Part shown: positions 100-36,947 of the stretch, piece after piece
Layout of the letters: every line of letters starts with the position of its first letter
How positions within the stretch are numbered: position 1 is the stretch's first letter
Origin: Diadema antillarum
Lineage: Eukaryota
Assembly: GCF_040938485.1 (NCBI RefSeq)
Contig: NW_027271922.1
Span: 186,001-250,000, forward strand
Direction of reading: 5' to 3'
DNA: 64,000 bases
The notes under the pieces: generated by a model
What the model saw: the letters and a program-made list of their open reading frames with translations, nothing else
Database searches by the model: none
What the model was told of the DNA's origin: nothing
Translations under genes and position numbers: made by a program

Positions 100-1443
100 T
101 CATATGACTTCGAAGAAATAATCACGTTCCCATTCCTCCTCTTCGTCACCTCGCTCTCTCGCTGCGTTTTCAAGTTTGATTTCGTTACGCTTTCCAGCCA
201 CAAAACACTTAATGAAATCGTGTCCGAGAGAAGAGATAATCACCTCATCGGCCAGTAGACTATCAATGGCCTCCTGCATGGTGTTCGGCAGTTTTGGAGT
301 CAGCGGCGGAATGTCTTCATCTTTGTACGCATCTCCGATGACTCGTTCGGGGAGAGGCAAGCGGTTGATGATGCCGTCAATGCCAGCAGCGACTGTTGCA
401 GCCAGACTTATGTACGGATTACACGCACTGGCTCCCATTCTGTTTTCAATGTACGTGCCACGCCCTCCCTGAATCTTCACCCGAAATGCGCAGGTTCGGT
501 TGTCCATTCCCCAAGTCGCGTTGCTCGGAGCGAAACTAAACGGCTTGTATCGCTTCAAACAGTTGATGGTTGGACCCATTAGGAGCGCTAGTGCACCGGC
601 GTGTGCATGTAATCCCGCCACCCAGTGTTGGCCTATGGTTGACAGCTTTAGAGGTTGAGAAGCATCATAGAGGAGGGGCTTCTCCCCGCTGACGTCCCAG
701 AGCGAGTGACAAAAGTGTGCCGAAGATCCCGGCTTGTCTGCCCAGGGCTTCGACATAAAGCTGGCCATGTATCCATGTTTCTGCGCGATCTCTTTGATAC
801 CACTCTTATAGGTGTGTCCATTGTCCGCCGCGCGGATGCCAAACTCGGGCCGGTAGGTGATCTCGATCTGACCCGTCGCCGATTCCGTGCCGACAAATTC
901 GACATCCACTCCAGCGGCGGGCAGACCTTCTAACACGTCCTGAGTGAAATCCTGGATCTTGAATAGACGCGACGTCGCGTTTGCGTTGGTAGACCTATCG
1001 ACGGGTTCTTTCGTCTTTTCGTCCAGGAGGTAGAATTCGAACTCGTGCGCGGAGAATAGAGAGTAACCCATTTCTTCCAGGCGCTCAAGTTGTCTACGAG
1101 CGATGACCCTCGGGTATGCTTCCACCACTTTCCCTTCGTAAACACCCTCGACCAAGACCCGCGCTGTTTTCTTGCACCACGGCAGTACCTGAAAGGTGGC
1201 CAGGTCGGGAAAGCAAACAGCGTCCTCGTAATGAATCTCCTCGCCGAACCCGGTGCCATCGATCGGCTCCCCGTGAGGGTTGAACGACAGGTAGCCCAGG
1301 CAGAAATTCTGGCCGTGGATCGCTTTATCTCTGAAGTGTTTTACAGGGATCAGCTTGCAGTGCGGAATGCCGTACACGTCGCTCTGCTCGAAGCGCACCG
1401 ATTTGATGTCAAAGAGATCGATCAACTTCACCGCTCGATCCAT
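100..1443 (-). CDS. LGSN: Lengsin-like class I glutamine synthetase family protein, copy 1 (447 aa, uninterrupted ORF)
   Basis: Motifs VRFEQ-D--G, TFQVLPW--TARV, AHEFEF, TE---GQIE, PEFG--AADN, GSSAHFCHSLWD, NRTCAFR and IENRMG-S-CNPY--LAATVAAG follow the lengsin/GSI pattern as I recall it. Most divergent and visibly the most GC-rich of the four copies. The symbol means lengsin-like, not proven orthologue. Confidence 0.93.
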   Translation of the reverse strand: MDRAVKLIDLFDIKSVRFEQSDVYGIPHCKLIPVKHFRDKAIHGQNFCLGYLSFNPHGEPIDGTGFGEEIHYEDAVCFPDLATFQVLPWCKKTARVLVEGVYEGKVVEAYPRVIARRQLERLEEMGYSLFSAHEFEFYLLDEKTKEPVDRSTNANATSRLFKIQDFTQDVLEGLPAAGVDVEFVGTESATGQIEITYRPEFGIRAADNGHTYKSGIKEIAQKHGYMASFMSKPWADKPGSSAHFCHSLWDVSGEKPLLYDASQPLKLSTIGQHWVAGLHAHAGALALLMGPTINCLKRYKPFSFAPSNATWGMDNRTCAFRVKIQGGRGTYIENRMGASACNPYISLAATVAAGIDGIINRLPLPERVIGDAYKDEDIPPLTPKLPNTMQEAIDSLLADEVIISSLGHDFIKCFVAGKRNEIKLENAARERGDEEEEWERDYFFEVI

Positions 1444-1740
1444 CTCGAACTAGGCAAGGTGTCAAACAGAAACGTCGAAAATTGACGGTTATTTGTGCAT
1501 CAGCTTGTTTTTCAAACTGCTGAGTATTACATTTTTTTATTTCTTGTAAGCTGAATATTGTCTGTATTTTCTATTTTGTTTTACATTATTAAAAGAACGC
1601 TCTATAAAGTTTATAGGAAAGAATGAGCACTTAATCTGAAAGTAATGGTCAGGCTGGATACGGATAAACATGGTTCTACATCATCAGGTTCTACATCAAC
1701 TTTTGCAGCAGACCAAGAAAGCCCTGACATTGAAATTAAA

Positions 1741-1835
1741 AATTGAATTGAATTGAATTCAATTCAATTGAATTCAACTGAATTCAATTCAATTTCATTT
1801 CTTTTCATTTCATTTCATGTAATTTTATTTGAATG
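1741..1835. repeat. (AATTG/AATTC/ATTTC)n pentamer simple repeat, probably retroposon tail(s)
   Basis: aattgaattgaattgaattcaattcaattg...ttcatttcatttcatg read directly. Confidence 0.7.
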
Positions 1836-2075
1836 CATTTCCCTGTCATCATCTCTGACACCTTCGTTTAGGTCGTATCAGCGCACTTTAAAGTGGATAA
1901 ACGTGACTAACATTAAACTGCGATGCAGATGGGCTTGAATAGAATGCGGTGCATTTATCAATGTCCGAGTCTAAACTGCGGAATCTTCTGTTTAAAATAA
2001 ATAGCACATGCTCGCACTCTGTGTTGTGTACATCCACTGACCTCTTCGTGCATACCGAGACACAAACGAGCAACA

Positions 2076-34012: not shown

Positions 34013-34063
<51 letters not shown>
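34013..34063. repeat. (ATTG)n microsatellite
   Basis: direct reading. Confidence 0.9.
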
Positions 34064-34065
<2 letters not shown>

Positions 34066-35600
34066 TTACTTTCGGAATAAAAGACAACGGCTGGATAGCC
34101 AATATTCAACGATGCCAACGTCACATTCCTGGTCTTCCATTGGGTGACCCCAAAATTACAAATACCTCAATATGAAATATGAGATACATGAATTGAAAAT
34201 ATGAAAAAAAACCTGAAATACTTACATTTTGAAAAAGTCGCATATTACAATTGATACAAAAAAACACAAAAGAAACGGATACAAGTGAAAGAATAGGGAT
34301 AATTCAACAACACTAATTAAAACCATACAGTTCTTTATTATTGACAAATAAAGATTGAAATAACAGGTTAACAACCAATTTTTAAATGCATCAACACTGG
34401 GTTAATCTTTATATCCAAATGAAGGTCATTATATTCCTTGGCATATCTGTATTTAAGGGATCTCTTCAAATATTCAGTTCTTCATTTAGGTAGTCTTAAT
34501 CTATGTCCAAAACGGGAAGAATAAGGATGCATGAGTTACAGCTTTAAATTCATTTCTCAAATAACAAGGGTGTCAGATATGAATATGATTGAACGACGCA
34601 ACAGAAACTATCTAGTTCACTAAGAATATGACGTGCTACACATGTCGTCAAACGTATACTATTGCTTTACGACATACAGTTTAATTGAGAAAATGTTCAA
34701 TTGCCTCATTATCGGCCGGCGTGCTTACGGTCTCCGTTTTACATGTTTTAGTAGAGAATTTTTCTGCTCTGCAGATATTATCATCTCATCACCATTGACA
34801 TGATTGACTTGTCACCACTGACTTTCACTGCCTATCTTATAAAGTTACATTTACTGTTTAAATTCGTTAAACCTGTACAAAGTGAGAGAGAAAGCTAAAA
34901 AAAAAAACTTTCATTAAGAAACAAGATTCTTCTCAGTCGCCTTGCCAGTTTATAAATCATTTAGGAATCAAGTAGATAAGTTGCCATTACAGAGAAACTT
35001 CCTCAACAAAATAAATGAAACAAAACAAAACAGATAACGTTTGCATAGCAAAAGACACCAATAAAAGATTTTTTTTTTTTGTCTACGAAACACGAATAAT
35101 GACTAGCTGGAATAGTAATTAAAAGATCACGCACCGGAGCATAGGAATACAATTTTGGAGACTTCATGGGTAAAGTGTCCGTATATGGCTTACGATGTTT
35201 GCAATCTTATTGGTTGATCATGTCGCTGACGGGAATTCTTCCATGTGCGTATATCATGTGTGCCGAACCTAACTTACGAAGATTTGATTATGAAATTGAG
35301 AAATCTCAACATGTGTATACCTAACTCCAGACTCATTGTCAATTAACTCACCTTTAGTAACAATTTCATCACTCAGAAAAACTTACCTTCCTGCACTGAA
35401 CAAACAGATTTGATGTGGAGCACAACATTTATTCATGATTTGCCTCATAACTAAATTCCGCATCCTAGAAACAGGAAACCTAAACTTGATGATATGCTTT
35501 CAACAATTGTCTTGGATCTGCTCAGTATTTTTTCGATAGCAAACTAACTATCTATCTTTCTAACTAGTAATAGTAAGCTAAACATATCTGCACAGTGCCT

Positions 35601-36947
35601 CTACGTCATGAAAAAGAAAAAGTCTCTTTCCCATTCCTCCAGTTTGCCTTTCTCTATTGCTTCTTTCTCAAGCTTCATCTCGTGCTTTTTGGCGGCAACA
35701 AAGAACTTCATGAACTCTTCTCCCAGTGCAGACGTGATCACTTCATCAGCTAACAGAGCTTCCACAGCCTCCTCCATGTTGTCTGGCAGTGCTGGTGTCA
35801 GTGGTGGAACGTATTCGTCATCATAAGCACTGCTCGCCCCGTCTATTCCTTTGGGTAAGGGTAGCTTATTGACGATTCCGTCCAGTCCTGCTGCAATTGT
35901 GGCCGCCATACTTATATAGGGATTGCATCCAGACGCACCAAGTCGATTTTCGATGTATGTGCCTTTGTCTCCCTGGATCTTGACTCGGATGGCGCAGGTG
36001 CGGTTGTCTGGACCCCAGGTAGCGTTATAGGGGGCAAAGGAATGACGCTTGAATCTTTTCAAGCAGTTTACCGTAGGTGCCATCAAAACTGATATAGCCC
36101 TGGCGTGAGCTAGGAGTCCTGCCACCCAGTACTCTCCAATTTCTGACAGGCCAGTTGAACTCGAAGCATCATATAGTTTGGGAATGACTCCCGTTTCATC
36201 CCATAGGGAATGACAAAAATGAGCTGAGCTGCCTGTCTTGTCAGGCCATGGTTTGGACATGAAGGATGCAATGTAATTATGTTTCAAAGCAATTTCTTTG
36301 ATTCCTGATTTGAAAGTATGAGCTGTATCGGCAGCTTTTAAACCAAACTCAGGTCTGTAGGTGATCTCTACATGACCCCGGTTTGCCTCACTGGTGACGC
36401 ATTCGACATCAACCCCTGCTTTGGGTAAGTCGACCACAGCCTGCTGGATAAAGTCTTCATAGGCAGAGAGGCGAAGCGTGGAGTAGGCGTACATTTGATT
36501 GTCTACGGGCTCCTTGGTGTCTCTCTTCACGAGGTAGAATTCGTGTTCATGGGCCGACCAAAGGGACAGACCAAAGTCAGACAAGCGGTCAAGCTGACGT
36601 CTTGCCACATCTCGTGGGTACGCTGGAATTTTCTTTCCGTCCTTCTCACTGTCCACCAAGACTCTGGCAGTCTTAGTCAACCAGGGGAGAATCGTAAATG
36701 TGTTCAAGTCAGGAGCTACATGACAGTCCGCTATTTGGATTTCCATTCCGTACCCAGTGTTTTCAAATATATCGCCGCTCGGATCGAATGCTAGGAAGCA
36801 CTTGGCAAAATTGAGACCGTTGCGAGCGACTCCCTTGAAATGCCTCGCGGGCATTGCCCGGCATACGGGTATGCCGTACTGAGTTGCTTGCTCGAATCGA
36901 ACGATAGTGACGCCATTCTTATCAAGTTGAGATATGATGTCATCCAT
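35601..36947 (-). CDS. LGSN: Lengsin-like class I glutamine synthetase family protein, copy 4 (448 aa)
   Basis: Uninterrupted ORF with AHEHEF, SEANRGHVE, TGSSAHFCHSLW, SFAP, NRTCAIR, IENR. Confidence 0.93.
   Translation of the reverse strand: MDDIISQLDKNGVTIVRFEQATQYGIPVCRAMPARHFKGVARNGLNFAKCFLAFDPSGDIFENTGYGMEIQIADCHVAPDLNTFTILPWLTKTARVLVDSEKDGKKIPAYPRDVARRQLDRLSDFGLSLWSAHEHEFYLVKRDTKEPVDNQMYAYSTLRLSAYEDFIQQAVVDLPKAGVDVECVTSEANRGHVEITYRPEFGLKAADTAHTFKSGIKEIALKHNYIASFMSKPWPDKTGSSAHFCHSLWDETGVIPKLYDASSSTGLSEIGEYWVAGLLAHARAISVLMAPTVNCLKRFKRHSFAPYNATWGPDNRTCAIRVKIQGDKGTYIENRLGASGCNPYISMAATIAAGLDGIVNKLPLPKGIDGASSAYDDEYVPPLTPALPDNMEEAVEALLADEVITSALGEEFMKFFVAAKKHEMKLEKEAIEKGKLEEWERDFFFFMT

What the first reader, a model, noticed from the sequence alone, without database searches (positions are those of the whole stretch)
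100..36947. Tandem array of four catalytically armed lengsin-like enzymes with a gamma-glutamyl-amine-ligase active site
Seen: all four keep the two metal Glu (AHE[F/H]EF), the E212 equivalent, H269, R339/R344 (NRTCA[F/I]R) and E357/R359 (IENR), using Salmonella GS numbering aligned by eye. All lack the ammonia-site residues: D50 is C/S/S/A (G.NF[C/S/A]), N264 is P/H/T/T, and the E327 flap is F (SFAP). Established: vertebrate lengsin is a catalytically dead lens protein; lengsin-like genes have been reported in sea urchin; bacterial GS-like enzymes lacking D50/E327 (PuuA, PauA, GlnA3, IpuC types) glutamylate organic amines rather than ammonia. Inference: this is an animal family of gamma-glutamyl-amine ligases with paralog-specific pockets, possibly showing the pre-lens biochemical role of the lengsin lineage.
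Basis: partly seen in the sequence, partly recalled or inferred. Interest (0 to 1): 0.78.

Follow-up and report, generated by a model that had tools for sequence, protein, structure and literature searches.

The report
Sea urchin glutamine-synthetase-like amine ligase array
Four neighbouring sea urchin (Diadema antillarum) genes encode glutamine-synthetase-like enzymes that keep the ATP, metal and glutamate machinery but have the substrate pocket of bacterial enzymes that attach glutamate to organic amines, so three of them probably glutamylate unknown amines, while the fourth has lost a metal-binding residue.

Summary
Four intact 447-448 aa ORFs lie head to tail on the minus strand. No assembly gap touches them. 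All are class I glutamine-synthetase-like (Pfam Gln-synt_C, E about 1e-85) and RefSeq already calls them "lengsin-like" in Diadema antillarum.

However, copy 3 has Met in place of the n1 metal ligand E220 in both haplotypes, so only three copies are fully armed.

The amine-ligase reading is supported:
- D50 and E327 are replaced, and E327 is Phe.
- The extended N-domain loop typical of organic-amine ligases is present.
- The closest relatives are bacterial GS-like genes next to transporters and amidohydrolases.
- Positions that line the amine site are among the most variable in the family, while ten catalytic residues are invariant in 69 of 89 members.

Two caveats apply. A conserved Asp (D55) sits seven residues after the D50 position. 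No substrate or expression data could be obtained.

The link to vertebrate lengsin is untested, and mouse lengsin is a weaker match than archaeal GS.

Gene conversion has homogenised the C-terminal halves of copies 2-4.

The scan reached the same reading on another piece of this genome (s1-211218).

The parts
100..1443 (-). Copy 1 (c1), 447 aa GS-like ORF. All ten catalytic residues are kept. D50 position is Cys, N264 position is Pro, E327 position is Phe, and the loop Asp position is Asn.
   Evidence: The identical protein is also encoded on D. antillarum contig JBFRCO010000004.1.
18589..19935 (-). Copy 2 (c2), 448 aa GS-like ORF. All ten catalytic residues are kept. Pocket residues are Ser, His and Phe at the D50, N264 and E327 positions.
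   Evidence: It is 99.8% identical to RefSeq XP_071504956 'lengsin-like'.
27783..29129 (-). Copy 3 (c3), 448 aa GS-like ORF. It keeps nine of the ten catalytic residues.
   Evidence: The comparison of the two alleles gives pN/pS 0.17.
28548..28550 (-). Codon 194 of copy 3. It reads ATG (Met) where copies 1, 2 and 4 read GAG (Glu). This is the E220 n1 metal ligand.
   Evidence: The same ATG is present in the other haplotype.
35601..36947 (-). Copy 4 (c4), 448 aa GS-like ORF. All ten catalytic residues are kept. Pocket residues are Ala, Thr and Phe at the D50, N264 and E327 positions.
   Evidence: The AlphaFold2 model has pLDDT 96.
36771..36809 (-). Codons 47-59 of copy 4 (FAKCFLAFDPSGD). This is the D50-position residue plus the inserted N-domain loop that aligns to NpaA1 V68'-M81'. 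The same codons lie at 1267-1305 (c1), 19759-19797 (c2) and 28953-28991 (c3).
   Evidence: PMC11335346.
18736..19185 (-). Codons 251-400 of copy 2: gene-conversion tract shared with copies 3 and 4 (27930-28379 and 35748-36197).
   Evidence: Between c2 and c3, dS is 0.03-0.11 in this tract and saturated in codons 1-250.
19975..19976 (-). Splice-acceptor AG 39 nt upstream of the copy 2 ATG. Similar acceptor-like sites lie at 29148-29149 (c3) and 36966-36967 (c4), and there is a candidate at 1450-1451 (c1).
   Evidence: The 39 nt encode the N-terminal extension of the annotated isoform P0210, so an upstream exon is joined here.
25895..27220 (.). Two copies of a roughly 440-nt repeat (25895-26332 and 26779-27220, 93% identical) downstream of copy 3. 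A 74% identical copy lies at 35257-35523, downstream of copy 4. These look like remnants of the duplicated 3' flank.

Best explanation
The window carries a head-to-tail array of four paralogous genes from the echinoderm 'lengsin-like' family of class I glutamine-synthetase-like proteins.

Proposed function (inferred). Copies 1, 2 and 4 are most likely active cytosolic ATP-dependent ligases. They would activate glutamate to gamma-glutamyl phosphate on a two-metal site, exactly as GS does. They would then transfer it to an organic amine rather than ammonia, giving a gamma-glutamyl amide. Each paralogue would prefer a different amine, and the substrates are unknown.

Copy 3. It lacks the n1 metal ligand E220 but still evolves under purifying selection. 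It is probably catalytically impaired: a pseudoenzyme, a subunit of mixed oligomers, or an enzyme with altered metal use.

Shown: gene structure, residue states, family relationships, gene conversion and the pattern of variability.

Inferred: catalytic activity, an amine as the nucleophile, and paralogue-specific substrates.
For: Intact genes.
- Four complete ORFs, free of gaps.
- Pfam Gln-synt_C at 1e-83 to 1e-86.
- AlphaFold2 pLDDT 96.
- Whole-length structural matches at Z 47-48 to the amine ligases NpaA1, GmaS and PA5508, and equally to GSI-alpha.

Catalytic core.
- E129, E131, E212, E220, H269, R321, R339, R344, E357 and R359 are kept in c1, c2 and c4.
- The same ten are kept in 69 of 89 echinoderm-type family members.
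- dN/dS between copies is 0.16-0.22.

Ammonia-specific residues gone.
- D50 is C/S/S/A and E327 is F.
- This matches GmaS (A48', W300; PMC7948447), PauA7/GlnA3 (Gly, Trp; PMC5403932) and NpaA1 (PMC11335346).

The inserted N-domain loop.
- It is 13 residues longer than in E. coli GlnA.
- It aligns residue for residue with the NpaA1 V68'-M81' loop that walls the amine tunnel.

Bacterial relatives at 40-50% identity.
- They share the Phe at E327 and a non-acidic residue at D50.
- In 5 of 6 loci they lie next to an uptake transporter, and in 3 of 6 next to Amidohydro_2.
- This resembles glnA3-SCO6961 (PMC5403932) and puuP-puuA.

Pocket diversification.
- Literature-derived amine-site positions are far more variable than random columns: p<5e-5 in 69 sequences and p=0.0005 in the 11-member subclade.
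- The single most variable column of that subclade aligns to NpaA1 M81'.
- Orthologues across Diadema species keep the same pocket residues.
Against: - No biochemical, transcript or metabolite evidence was obtained. No RNA run was listed.
- A conserved Asp in the inserted loop could act as a base or ammonium ligand. It is D55 in c2-c4, present in 57 of 69 echinoderm and 18 of 18 bacterial relatives. HMMER places it opposite GS D50, with low confidence.
- PuuA and NpaA1 carry the same Asp, so it does not separate the two readings.
- By sequence score, true GSI-alpha enzymes are the best solved matches. Structure search does not separate GS from amine ligases.
- All curated NCBIfam models (GlnA, GmaS, PuuA) score far below their cut-offs.
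- The variability test used a position set chosen after I had seen the alignment. Loops also tend to vary more than core positions.
Confidence: 0.6

Rival explanations
1. They are genuine glutamine synthetases that use ammonia. They would be an extra GSI-type set beside the normal animal GSII, for example for ammonia detoxification. This is what was proposed for the expanded 'lengsin' genes of vestimentiferan tubeworms.
For: - The best solved sequence matches are GSI-alpha enzymes at 180-188 bits.
- The full ATP, metal and glutamate machinery is kept.
- A conserved loop Asp (D55) could conceivably replace D50.
- The ammonia/urea detoxification idea has been voiced for annelid lengsins (PMC8789280).
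Against: - E327 is Phe in all four copies, and the D50 position is C/S/S/A.
- The TIGR00653 GlnA model scores 203-227 against a cut-off of 429.
- Enzymes with these replacements are reported to have lost glutamine synthesis (PMC11335346, PMC7948447).
- Strong diversification of pocket residues among paralogues makes little sense for one small invariant substrate.
Confidence: 0.1
2. They are non-catalytic structural or regulatory proteins (pseudoenzymes), as vertebrate lens lengsin is.
For: - The family repeatedly loses catalytic residues: 20 of 89 members, including copy 3 here and the S. purpuratus protein named 'lengsin'.
- Vertebrate lengsin has no enzyme activity (Wyatt et al. 2006, from my own knowledge; the paper is not held).
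Against: - Ten catalytic residues are invariant in 69 of 89 members across all five echinoderm classes.
- They are intact in c1, c2 and c4.
- dN/dS is about 0.2.
- Such conservation of metal, ATP and glutamate ligands is not expected without catalysis.
Confidence: 0.1
3. They are active ligases with chemistry other than glutamate plus simple amine. Examples are a different acyl donor, or an amino acid, peptide or other nitrogen or oxygen nucleophile.
For: - The N264 position, a glutamate alpha-amino contact in GS, is P/H/T/T and is one of the most variable columns.
- Some bacterial relatives sit beside Peptidase_M20, aminotransferase or AMP-binding genes rather than classical amine-catabolic genes.
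Against: - R321, E131 and G265, the remaining glutamate contacts, are conserved.
- PuuA, a proven glutamate-putrescine ligase, also lacks N264.
Confidence: 0.15
4. The genes are bacterial contamination or a recent, non-functional horizontal insertion.
For: - The coding sequences have no introns.
- The nearest non-echinoderm relatives are bacterial, at 40-50% identity.
- The bacterial clade falls among the echinoderm clades in the tree, with weak backbone support.
Against: - The genes lie on two Mb-scale contigs of the same assembly, among animal transposons.
- They have splice acceptors just upstream of the ATG, and an annotated spliced isoform exists.
- Orthologues and paralogues occur in all five echinoderm classes on chromosome-scale contigs.
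Confidence: 0.02

Closest known systems
Glutamyl-organic-amine synthases (GoaS): NpaA1/AtdA1, PauA7 (PA5508), PuuA, GlnA2/3/4
   Same: - GSI fold, with NpaA1 8wwu at Z 48.4 over 435 residues.
- Metal, ATP and glutamate residues are conserved.
- D50 and E327 are replaced by non-acidic residues.
- The extended N-domain loop aligns to NpaA1 V68'-M81', and the conserved loop Asp is shared with PuuA and NpaA1.
- A transporter-linked catabolic context is seen in the bacterial relatives.
   Different: - These are animal nuclear genes with a 5' exon.
- Identity to any characterised member is only 28-30%.
- The PuuA model NF045547 scores 208-234 against a cut-off of 650.
- Phe, not Trp or Tyr, occupies the E327 position.
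- No substrate is known.
- The family forms a large paralogous radiation with a diversifying pocket.
Gamma-glutamylmethylamide synthetase (GmaS)
   Same: - The same 'G-x-x-F-A/S' motif at the D50 position as RhGmaS F47'-A48' (PMC7948447).
- An aromatic residue at the Glu-flap position.
- 161-181 bits to MmGmaS 9qur.
   Different: - TIGR03105 scores 219-235 against a cut-off of 469.6.
- The MmGmaS loop after the D50 position is about 10 residues shorter, and its flap carries a 4-residue insertion.
GSI-alpha glutamine synthetase (for example B. subtilis, P. polymyxa, methanogen GS)
   Same: - Best sequence matches among solved structures, at 180-188 bits.
- Same length class, about 445 aa.
- Identical catalytic core.
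   Different: - Lacks D50 and the E327 flap glutamate.
- Has a 13-residue insertion after the D50 position.
- TIGR00653 scores below its cut-off.
Vertebrate lengsin (LGSN, PDB 2j9i)
   Same: - It is a GSI-type protein in an animal.
- It is the source of the RefSeq name 'lengsin-like'.
- The wider echinoderm family also produces catalytically degenerate members.
   Different: - Mouse lengsin is a weaker match (122 bits) than archaeal GS or GmaS.
- There is no N-terminal extension here.
- The active site is intact in three of the four copies.
- Orthology was not tested.
Expanded 'lengsin' genes of vestimentiferan annelids (Riftia 7, Lamellibrachia 13; PMC8789280)
   Same: A lineage-specific expansion of GSI-type genes in a marine invertebrate.
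   Different: - It was interpreted there as ammonia/urea detoxification, and active-site residues were not discussed in the passages read.
- Its relationship to the echinoderm clade was not tested here.

Membership tests
Glutamyl-organic-amine synthases (GoaS-type GS-like amine ligases) | GSI fold with conserved two-metal, ATP and glutamate ligands | tested here: met
   Met for c1, c2 and c4. Copy 3 lacks E220.
Glutamyl-organic-amine synthases (GoaS-type GS-like amine ligases) | Loss of the catalytic Asp50' and of the Glu327 flap residue | tested here: met
   MAFFT and HMMER alignments give D50 as C/S/S/A and E327 as F. Caveat: a conserved Asp lies 7 residues downstream.
Glutamyl-organic-amine synthases (GoaS-type GS-like amine ligases) | Extended N-domain loop ('motif 15' of PMC11335346) forming the amine tunnel of the neighbouring subunit | tested here: met
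   There is a 13-residue insertion relative to E. coli GlnA. c4 F47-D59 aligns to NpaA1 V68'-M81'. This rests on sequence alignment only, with no oligomer model.
Glutamyl-organic-amine synthases (GoaS-type GS-like amine ligases) | Amine-dependent, ammonia-independent gamma-glutamyl amide synthesis | not testable with these tools
   Needs enzyme assays.
Glutamyl-organic-amine synthases (GoaS-type GS-like amine ligases) | Phylogenetic placement with characterised GoaS enzymes | not tested
   Only E. coli PuuA and GlnA could be brought in as sequences, and both act as distant outgroups. Sequences of solved structures cannot be exported.
Glutamine synthetase type I (GlnA, EC 6.3.1.2) | Ammonium-site residues D50' and E327, and a score above the TIGR00653 cut-off | tested here: not met
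   D50 and E327 are replaced. TIGR00653 scores 203-227 bits against 429. The Y179 position depends on the alignment: A154, or Y/F/N155.
GmaS (TIGR03105) and PuuA (NF045547) equivalogs | Score above the curated equivalog cut-off | tested here: not met
   TIGR03105 scores 219-235 against 469.6. NF045547 scores 208-234 against 650.
Vertebrate lengsin (LGSN) | Catalytically degenerate active site | tested here: not met
   c1, c2 and c4 keep all ten catalytic residues. Only c3 has one loss.
Vertebrate lengsin (LGSN) | Extra N-terminal domain ahead of the GS homology region | tested here: not met
   The proteins are 447-448 aa and align from residue 1-2 to GS-like structures. That vertebrate lengsin has such a domain is from my own knowledge of Wyatt et al. 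2006.
Vertebrate lengsin (LGSN) | Orthology by phylogeny | not tested
   No vertebrate lengsin sequence could be retrieved. It never appeared among the top 120 hits. PDB 2j9i scores 122 bits against 188 for archaeal GS.

The most novel reading that the evidence does not exclude
The echinoderm 'lengsin-like' radiation (at least 9 loci in D. antillarum) may be an animal conjugation system. It would be a set of gamma-glutamyl-amine ligases whose pockets diversify the way detoxification enzymes do. They would inactivate biogenic, dietary or microbial amines.

If so, this would be the first gene family assigned to the ATP-dependent gamma-glutamyl-amine synthetase activity described biochemically in invertebrate nervous tissue decades ago (gastropods; cited in PMC6454038). 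As far as I know, no gene has been assigned to that activity.

Copy 3 and the other members that have lost metal ligands would be repeated, independent steps towards the non-catalytic state seen in vertebrate lens lengsin.
Probability: 0.25. Interest if true: 0.75.

Novelty: new member of a known kind. Interest (0 to 1): 0.5.

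Why it matters
Gamma-glutamylation of organic amines by GS-like enzymes is well established in bacteria. As far as the searched literature shows, it has not been shown for any animal enzyme. No paper in the library uses the term 'lengsin-like'.

If these proteins are amine ligases:
- Animals would have a previously unrecognised ATP-dependent amine-conjugation pathway.
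- The large, unexplained GSI-type expansions in echinoderms, and perhaps in annelids, would gain a function.
- Candidates would exist for the orphan gamma-glutamyl-amine synthetase activity of invertebrates.

The array also shows mosaic evolution clearly. Gene conversion keeps the catalytic C-terminal half uniform, while the N-terminal half, which carries the pocket, stays paralogue-specific.

The limits are real. The genes are already annotated, the functional claim is an inference from residues, and the scan has already made the same inference elsewhere in this genome.

Tried and rejected
- Expression.
- Logan contigs of a copy 1 orthologue (P0010; L009, L010). I hoped these were transcripts. 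They carry an acceptor-like sequence upstream of the ATG and look genomic, so they give no expression evidence.
- Wyatt et al. 2006 (PMC1868402) is not held.
- Vertebrate lengsin. Three word searches (c2, P0069, P0089) never listed a vertebrate lengsin in their top 120 hits. Orthology with lengsin could therefore not be tested.
- S. purpuratus 'lengsin' (P0069). It has a degenerate site but groups with echinoid paralogues, and its next-best hits are bacterial. It cannot be called the lengsin orthologue.
- Structure search does not separate amine ligases from true GS. All score Z 47-48.
- The model tool returns no coordinates, so I could not check where D55 or F304 sit relative to the active site.
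- The ESM Atlas look-up only returned generic GS-family clusters.
- A Pfam scan of ten other long ORFs in the window found only a QRICH1 domain inside a transposon. No partner enzyme such as a gamma-glutamyl-amide hydrolase or amine oxidase was seen, but spliced genes would be missed by an ORF scan.
- Retrocopy origin rejected. No poly(A) remnant was found, acceptor sites precede the ATG, and a diverged 3' flank repeat is shared by copies 3 and 4.
- Contamination rejected.
- One script had an off-by-one error and was redone.

Full report
WHAT IS THERE

The window is sea urchin DNA with 38.6% G+C. An exact-protein look-up places copy 1 on two contigs of Diadema antillarum assembly GCA_040938485.1. 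One is the 1.0-Mb contig JBFRCO010001034.1, which is the window's own. The other is the 4.34-Mb contig JBFRCO010000004.1. The window is therefore a second copy, probably a haplotig, of a region that is also assembled elsewhere.

Four complete ORFs of 447 or 448 codons lie head to tail on the minus strand:
- c1: 100-1443
- c2: 18589-19935
- c3: 27783-29129
- c4: 35601-36947

None of them contains an N, and the nearest assembly gap is 1528 nt or more away. The gaps flagged by the scan's program are intergenic and have no bearing on frame or continuity of the coding sequences. They could still hide 5' exons. tblastn with the four proteins finds nothing else in the 64 kb, and no further family gene is called within 10 kb beyond the window's left edge.

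Protein identities are 92% for c3/c4, 80-82% for c2 against c3 or c4, and about 60% for c1 against the rest.

RefSeq already annotates the genes as 'lengsin-like'.

GENE STRUCTURE

Each coding sequence is a single exon.

In c2, a polypyrimidine-CAG acceptor lies 39 nt upstream of the ATG. These 39 nt encode exactly the N-terminal extension of an annotated 462-aa isoform, whose first Met must come from an upstream exon. Copies 3 and 4 have a similar acceptor-like site 18 nt upstream of the ATG.

These are therefore ordinary animal genes with a 5' exon. They are neither retrocopies nor contamination.

FAMILY AND FOLD

All four proteins match Pfam Gln-synt_C at 1e-83 to 1e-86.

The curated NCBIfam models score about equally and far below their cut-offs:
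- GmaS (TIGR03105): 219-235 bits
- PuuA: 208-234 bits
- GlnA: 203-227 bits

The best solved sequence matches are:
- GSI-alpha enzymes: 180-188 bits
- MmGmaS: 161-181 bits
- NpaA1: 154-168 bits
- RhGmaS: 127 bits
- PA5508: 124 bits
- mouse lengsin 2j9i: 122 bits

An AlphaFold2 model of c4 has pLDDT 96.1. It superposes over its whole length on NpaA1 (Z 48.4, 435 residues). It superposes equally well on GSI-alpha, GmaS and PA5508, all at Z 47-48. The fold is certain, but it does not decide the function.

ACTIVE-SITE RESIDUES

The four copies and more than 100 homologues were aligned to E. coli GlnA and PuuA, both fetched from K-12.

All four copies keep E129, E131, E212, H269, R321, R339, R344, E357 and R359. 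The D50 position is C/S/S/A, N264 is P/H/T/T and E327 is F. HMMER alignments to solved GS structures agree for the flap ('RHSFAP' opposite 'PGYEAP') and for the N264 loop.

First, c3 has Met instead of E220, an n1 metal ligand. The change is a GAG-to-ATG double substitution. It is present in the other haplotype too, so it is not a sequencing error. The two c3 alleles differ by 12 synonymous and 7 non-synonymous changes, giving pN/pS 0.17. c3 is therefore still constrained. The other allele also has a 1-nt deletion in an A5 run near codon 10. That may be a null allele or a homopolymer error.

Second, N264 is a glutamate contact in GS rather than an ammonia contact. PuuA, a proven glutamate-putrescine ligase, has Ala there.

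Third, the copies carry a 13-residue insertion right after the D50 position. It contains a conserved Asp: D55 in c2-c4 and Asn in c1. The same Asp is found in 57 of 69 echinoderm and 18 of 18 bacterial relatives, and also in PuuA and NpaA1. HMMER aligns this Asp to GS D50 with low posterior probability. Three things favour the 'G-x-x-F-[D/A]' register instead: MAFFT, the predicted beta-strand 45-48, and the published structural equivalence of RhGmaS A48' with D50' (PMC7948447).

I could not inspect coordinates, so a functional role for D55 stays open. Because PuuA and NpaA1 have it too, it does not argue for ammonia.

The Y179 position depends on the alignment: A154, or Y/F/N at 155.

WHY AN AMINE LIGASE IS THE BEST READING

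(a) The same pair of losses defines characterised amine ligases. In GmaS they are A48' and W300 (PMC7948447). In PauA7 and GlnA3 they are Gly and Trp (PMC5403932). The same holds for NpaA1 and other 'GoaS' enzymes, which are reported to have lost glutamine synthesis (PMC11335346).

(b) c4 F47-D59 aligns position for position with the NpaA1 loop V68'-M81'. In the crystal structure that loop walls the enlarged hydrophobic amine pocket of the neighbouring subunit (PMC11335346).

(c) The nearest non-echinoderm relatives are bacterial 'glutamine synthetase family proteins' at 40-50% identity, from Chloroflexota, Cyanobacteria, Rokubacteria and Actinomycetota. They share the Phe at E327 and a non-acidic D50 position. 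Across six genomic contexts:
- five have an adjacent uptake transporter;
- three have an Amidohydro_2 gene;
- three have a second GS-like gene;
- one has a class III aminotransferase.
This resembles glnA3-SCO6961 in Streptomyces (PMC5403932) and puuP-puuA in E. coli.

(d) The family behaves like enzymes with a fixed chemistry and a changing substrate. Among 89 echinoderm-type sequences, 69 keep all ten catalytic residues. In contrast, the D50, G325, N264 and Y179 positions rank 26th to 34th of 445 columns by entropy. A set of eight positions was taken from the GS ammonium site and the NpaA1 tunnel. It is more variable than random sets, with p<5e-5 in 69 sequences and p=0.0005 in the 11-member clade of c2-c4 plus camarodont orthologues. 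In that clade the most variable column of all is c4 residue 59, with nine different residues in eleven sequences. It aligns to NpaA1 M81', a residue decisive for naphthylamine use (PMC11335346). It is followed by residues 238 and 237, the N264 loop. Orthologues in D. setosum keep the same pocket residues as c1 and c4. The variation is therefore between paralogues and is not noise.

Two cautions apply to the test in (d). The position set was fixed after I had seen the alignment, and loops vary more than cores in any protein.

EVOLUTION OF THE ARRAY

In the maximum-likelihood tree, c1 and the group (c2,(c3,c4)) fall in an echinoid-specific clade. The family as a whole has several paralogues in each of the five echinoderm classes. 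D. antillarum has at least nine loci on four or more contigs.

DNA similarity between copies stops at the coding sequence. It extends only 69 nt upstream and 23 nt downstream for c3/c4. A repeat downstream of c3 and c4 is only 74% identical, while the coding sequences are 92% identical.

Windowed dS shows why. Between c2 and c3, dS is saturated in codons 1-250 but is 0.03-0.11 in codons 251-400. Gene conversion has homogenised the C-terminal half, which holds the flap, R339, R344, E357 and R359. The N-terminal half holds the D50 loop, the Y179 region, the E212/E220 strand and the N264 loop, and it stays paralogue-specific.

Overall dN/dS between copies is 0.16-0.22.

RELATION TO LENGSIN

The name comes from automated annotation. 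I could not retrieve a vertebrate lengsin sequence, so orthology is untested.

What can be said:
- Mouse lengsin is a weaker match than archaeal GS or GmaS.
- The proteins lack an N-terminal extension.
- Three of the four copies are not degenerate.
- Twenty of the 89 family members have lost one or more catalytic residues. These include c3 and the S. purpuratus protein named 'lengsin', which has R, G, G and C at the E129, E212, E220 and R339 positions. Loss of catalysis therefore recurs in this family.

That is a parallel to lengsin, not proof of common descent.

Expansions of 'lengsin' genes have also been reported in vestimentiferan tubeworms, where they were read as ammonia/urea detoxification (PMC8789280).

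WHAT IS MISSING

No RNA run was listed, and no paper in the library uses 'lengsin-like'. One sea cucumber proteomics study lists an acetylated 'Lengsin' peptide, so at least one holothurian member is made as protein.

Substrates are unknown. Gamma-glutamyl conjugation of monoamines is documented in gastropods (PMC6454038). That makes biogenic amines one candidate class, but nothing here ties the echinoderm genes to it.

VERDICT

The amine-ligase interpretation is the best-supported one for c1, c2 and c4 (confidence about 0.6). Copy 3 is probably catalytically impaired. The lengsin-lineage inference is open.

The genes are already annotated, and an earlier follow-up in this scan reached the same reading on another piece of this genome (s1-211218). 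This is a new animal member of a known enzyme kind. It is of moderate interest until an assay is done.

Noticed in passing
whole window; L006, L007 and L008 (D. antillarum GCA_040938485.1): The window's 1.0-Mb contig duplicates a region of the 4.34-Mb contig of the same assembly, probably as a haplotig. The proteins of the two copies differ by 0-2.5%, so allelic comparisons are possible.
   Followed up: partly
L008:9801-11146 (other haplotype of copy 3): The other c3 allele has a 1-nt deletion in an A5 run near codon 10. This explains the truncated 381-aa RefSeq model XP_071504859. It may be a real null allele or a homopolymer assembly error. Apart from that, the alleles differ by 12 synonymous and 7 non-synonymous changes.
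   Followed up: partly
window 25895-26332, 26779-27220, 35257-35523: A roughly 440-nt element is tandemly duplicated (93% identical, 884 nt apart) downstream of copy 3. A 74% identical copy lies just downstream of copy 4. It is likely a remnant of the duplicated 3' flank, and it is far more diverged than the coding sequences.
   Followed up: partly
window 12408-12956 (-): A 182-aa ORF has a QRICH1 domain (Pfam PF25561, E 1.7e-8).
   Followed up: no
family-wide (proteins P0019, P0049, P0051, P0063, P0064, P0066, P0067, P0069, P0073, P0076, P0087, P0099, P0112, P0117 and others): Twenty of 89 echinoderm-type family members have lost at least one of ten catalytic residues. The losses occur in several separate clades. 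One Holothuria clade has replaced R321, the glutamate carboxylate ligand. This points to repeated pseudoenzyme formation or a change of substrate.
   Followed up: partly
tree; P0089: The bacterial GS-like clade falls among the echinoderm clades when rooted on E. coli GlnA and PuuA, but the backbone support is weak. An unnamed 504-aa protein (P0089, from a Logan contig) is 49% identical to Chloroflexota proteins and 47% identical to crinoid proteins. The origin of the animal family, whether ancient inheritance or transfer, is unresolved.
   Followed up: partly
window 37000-64000: No further GS-like copy was found, and none of the long ORFs scanned gave a Pfam match. Four more assembly gaps lie at 51056-51191, 51634-51858, 55871-56005 and 58665-58843. 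Spliced genes would not have been detected by the ORF scan.
   Followed up: no
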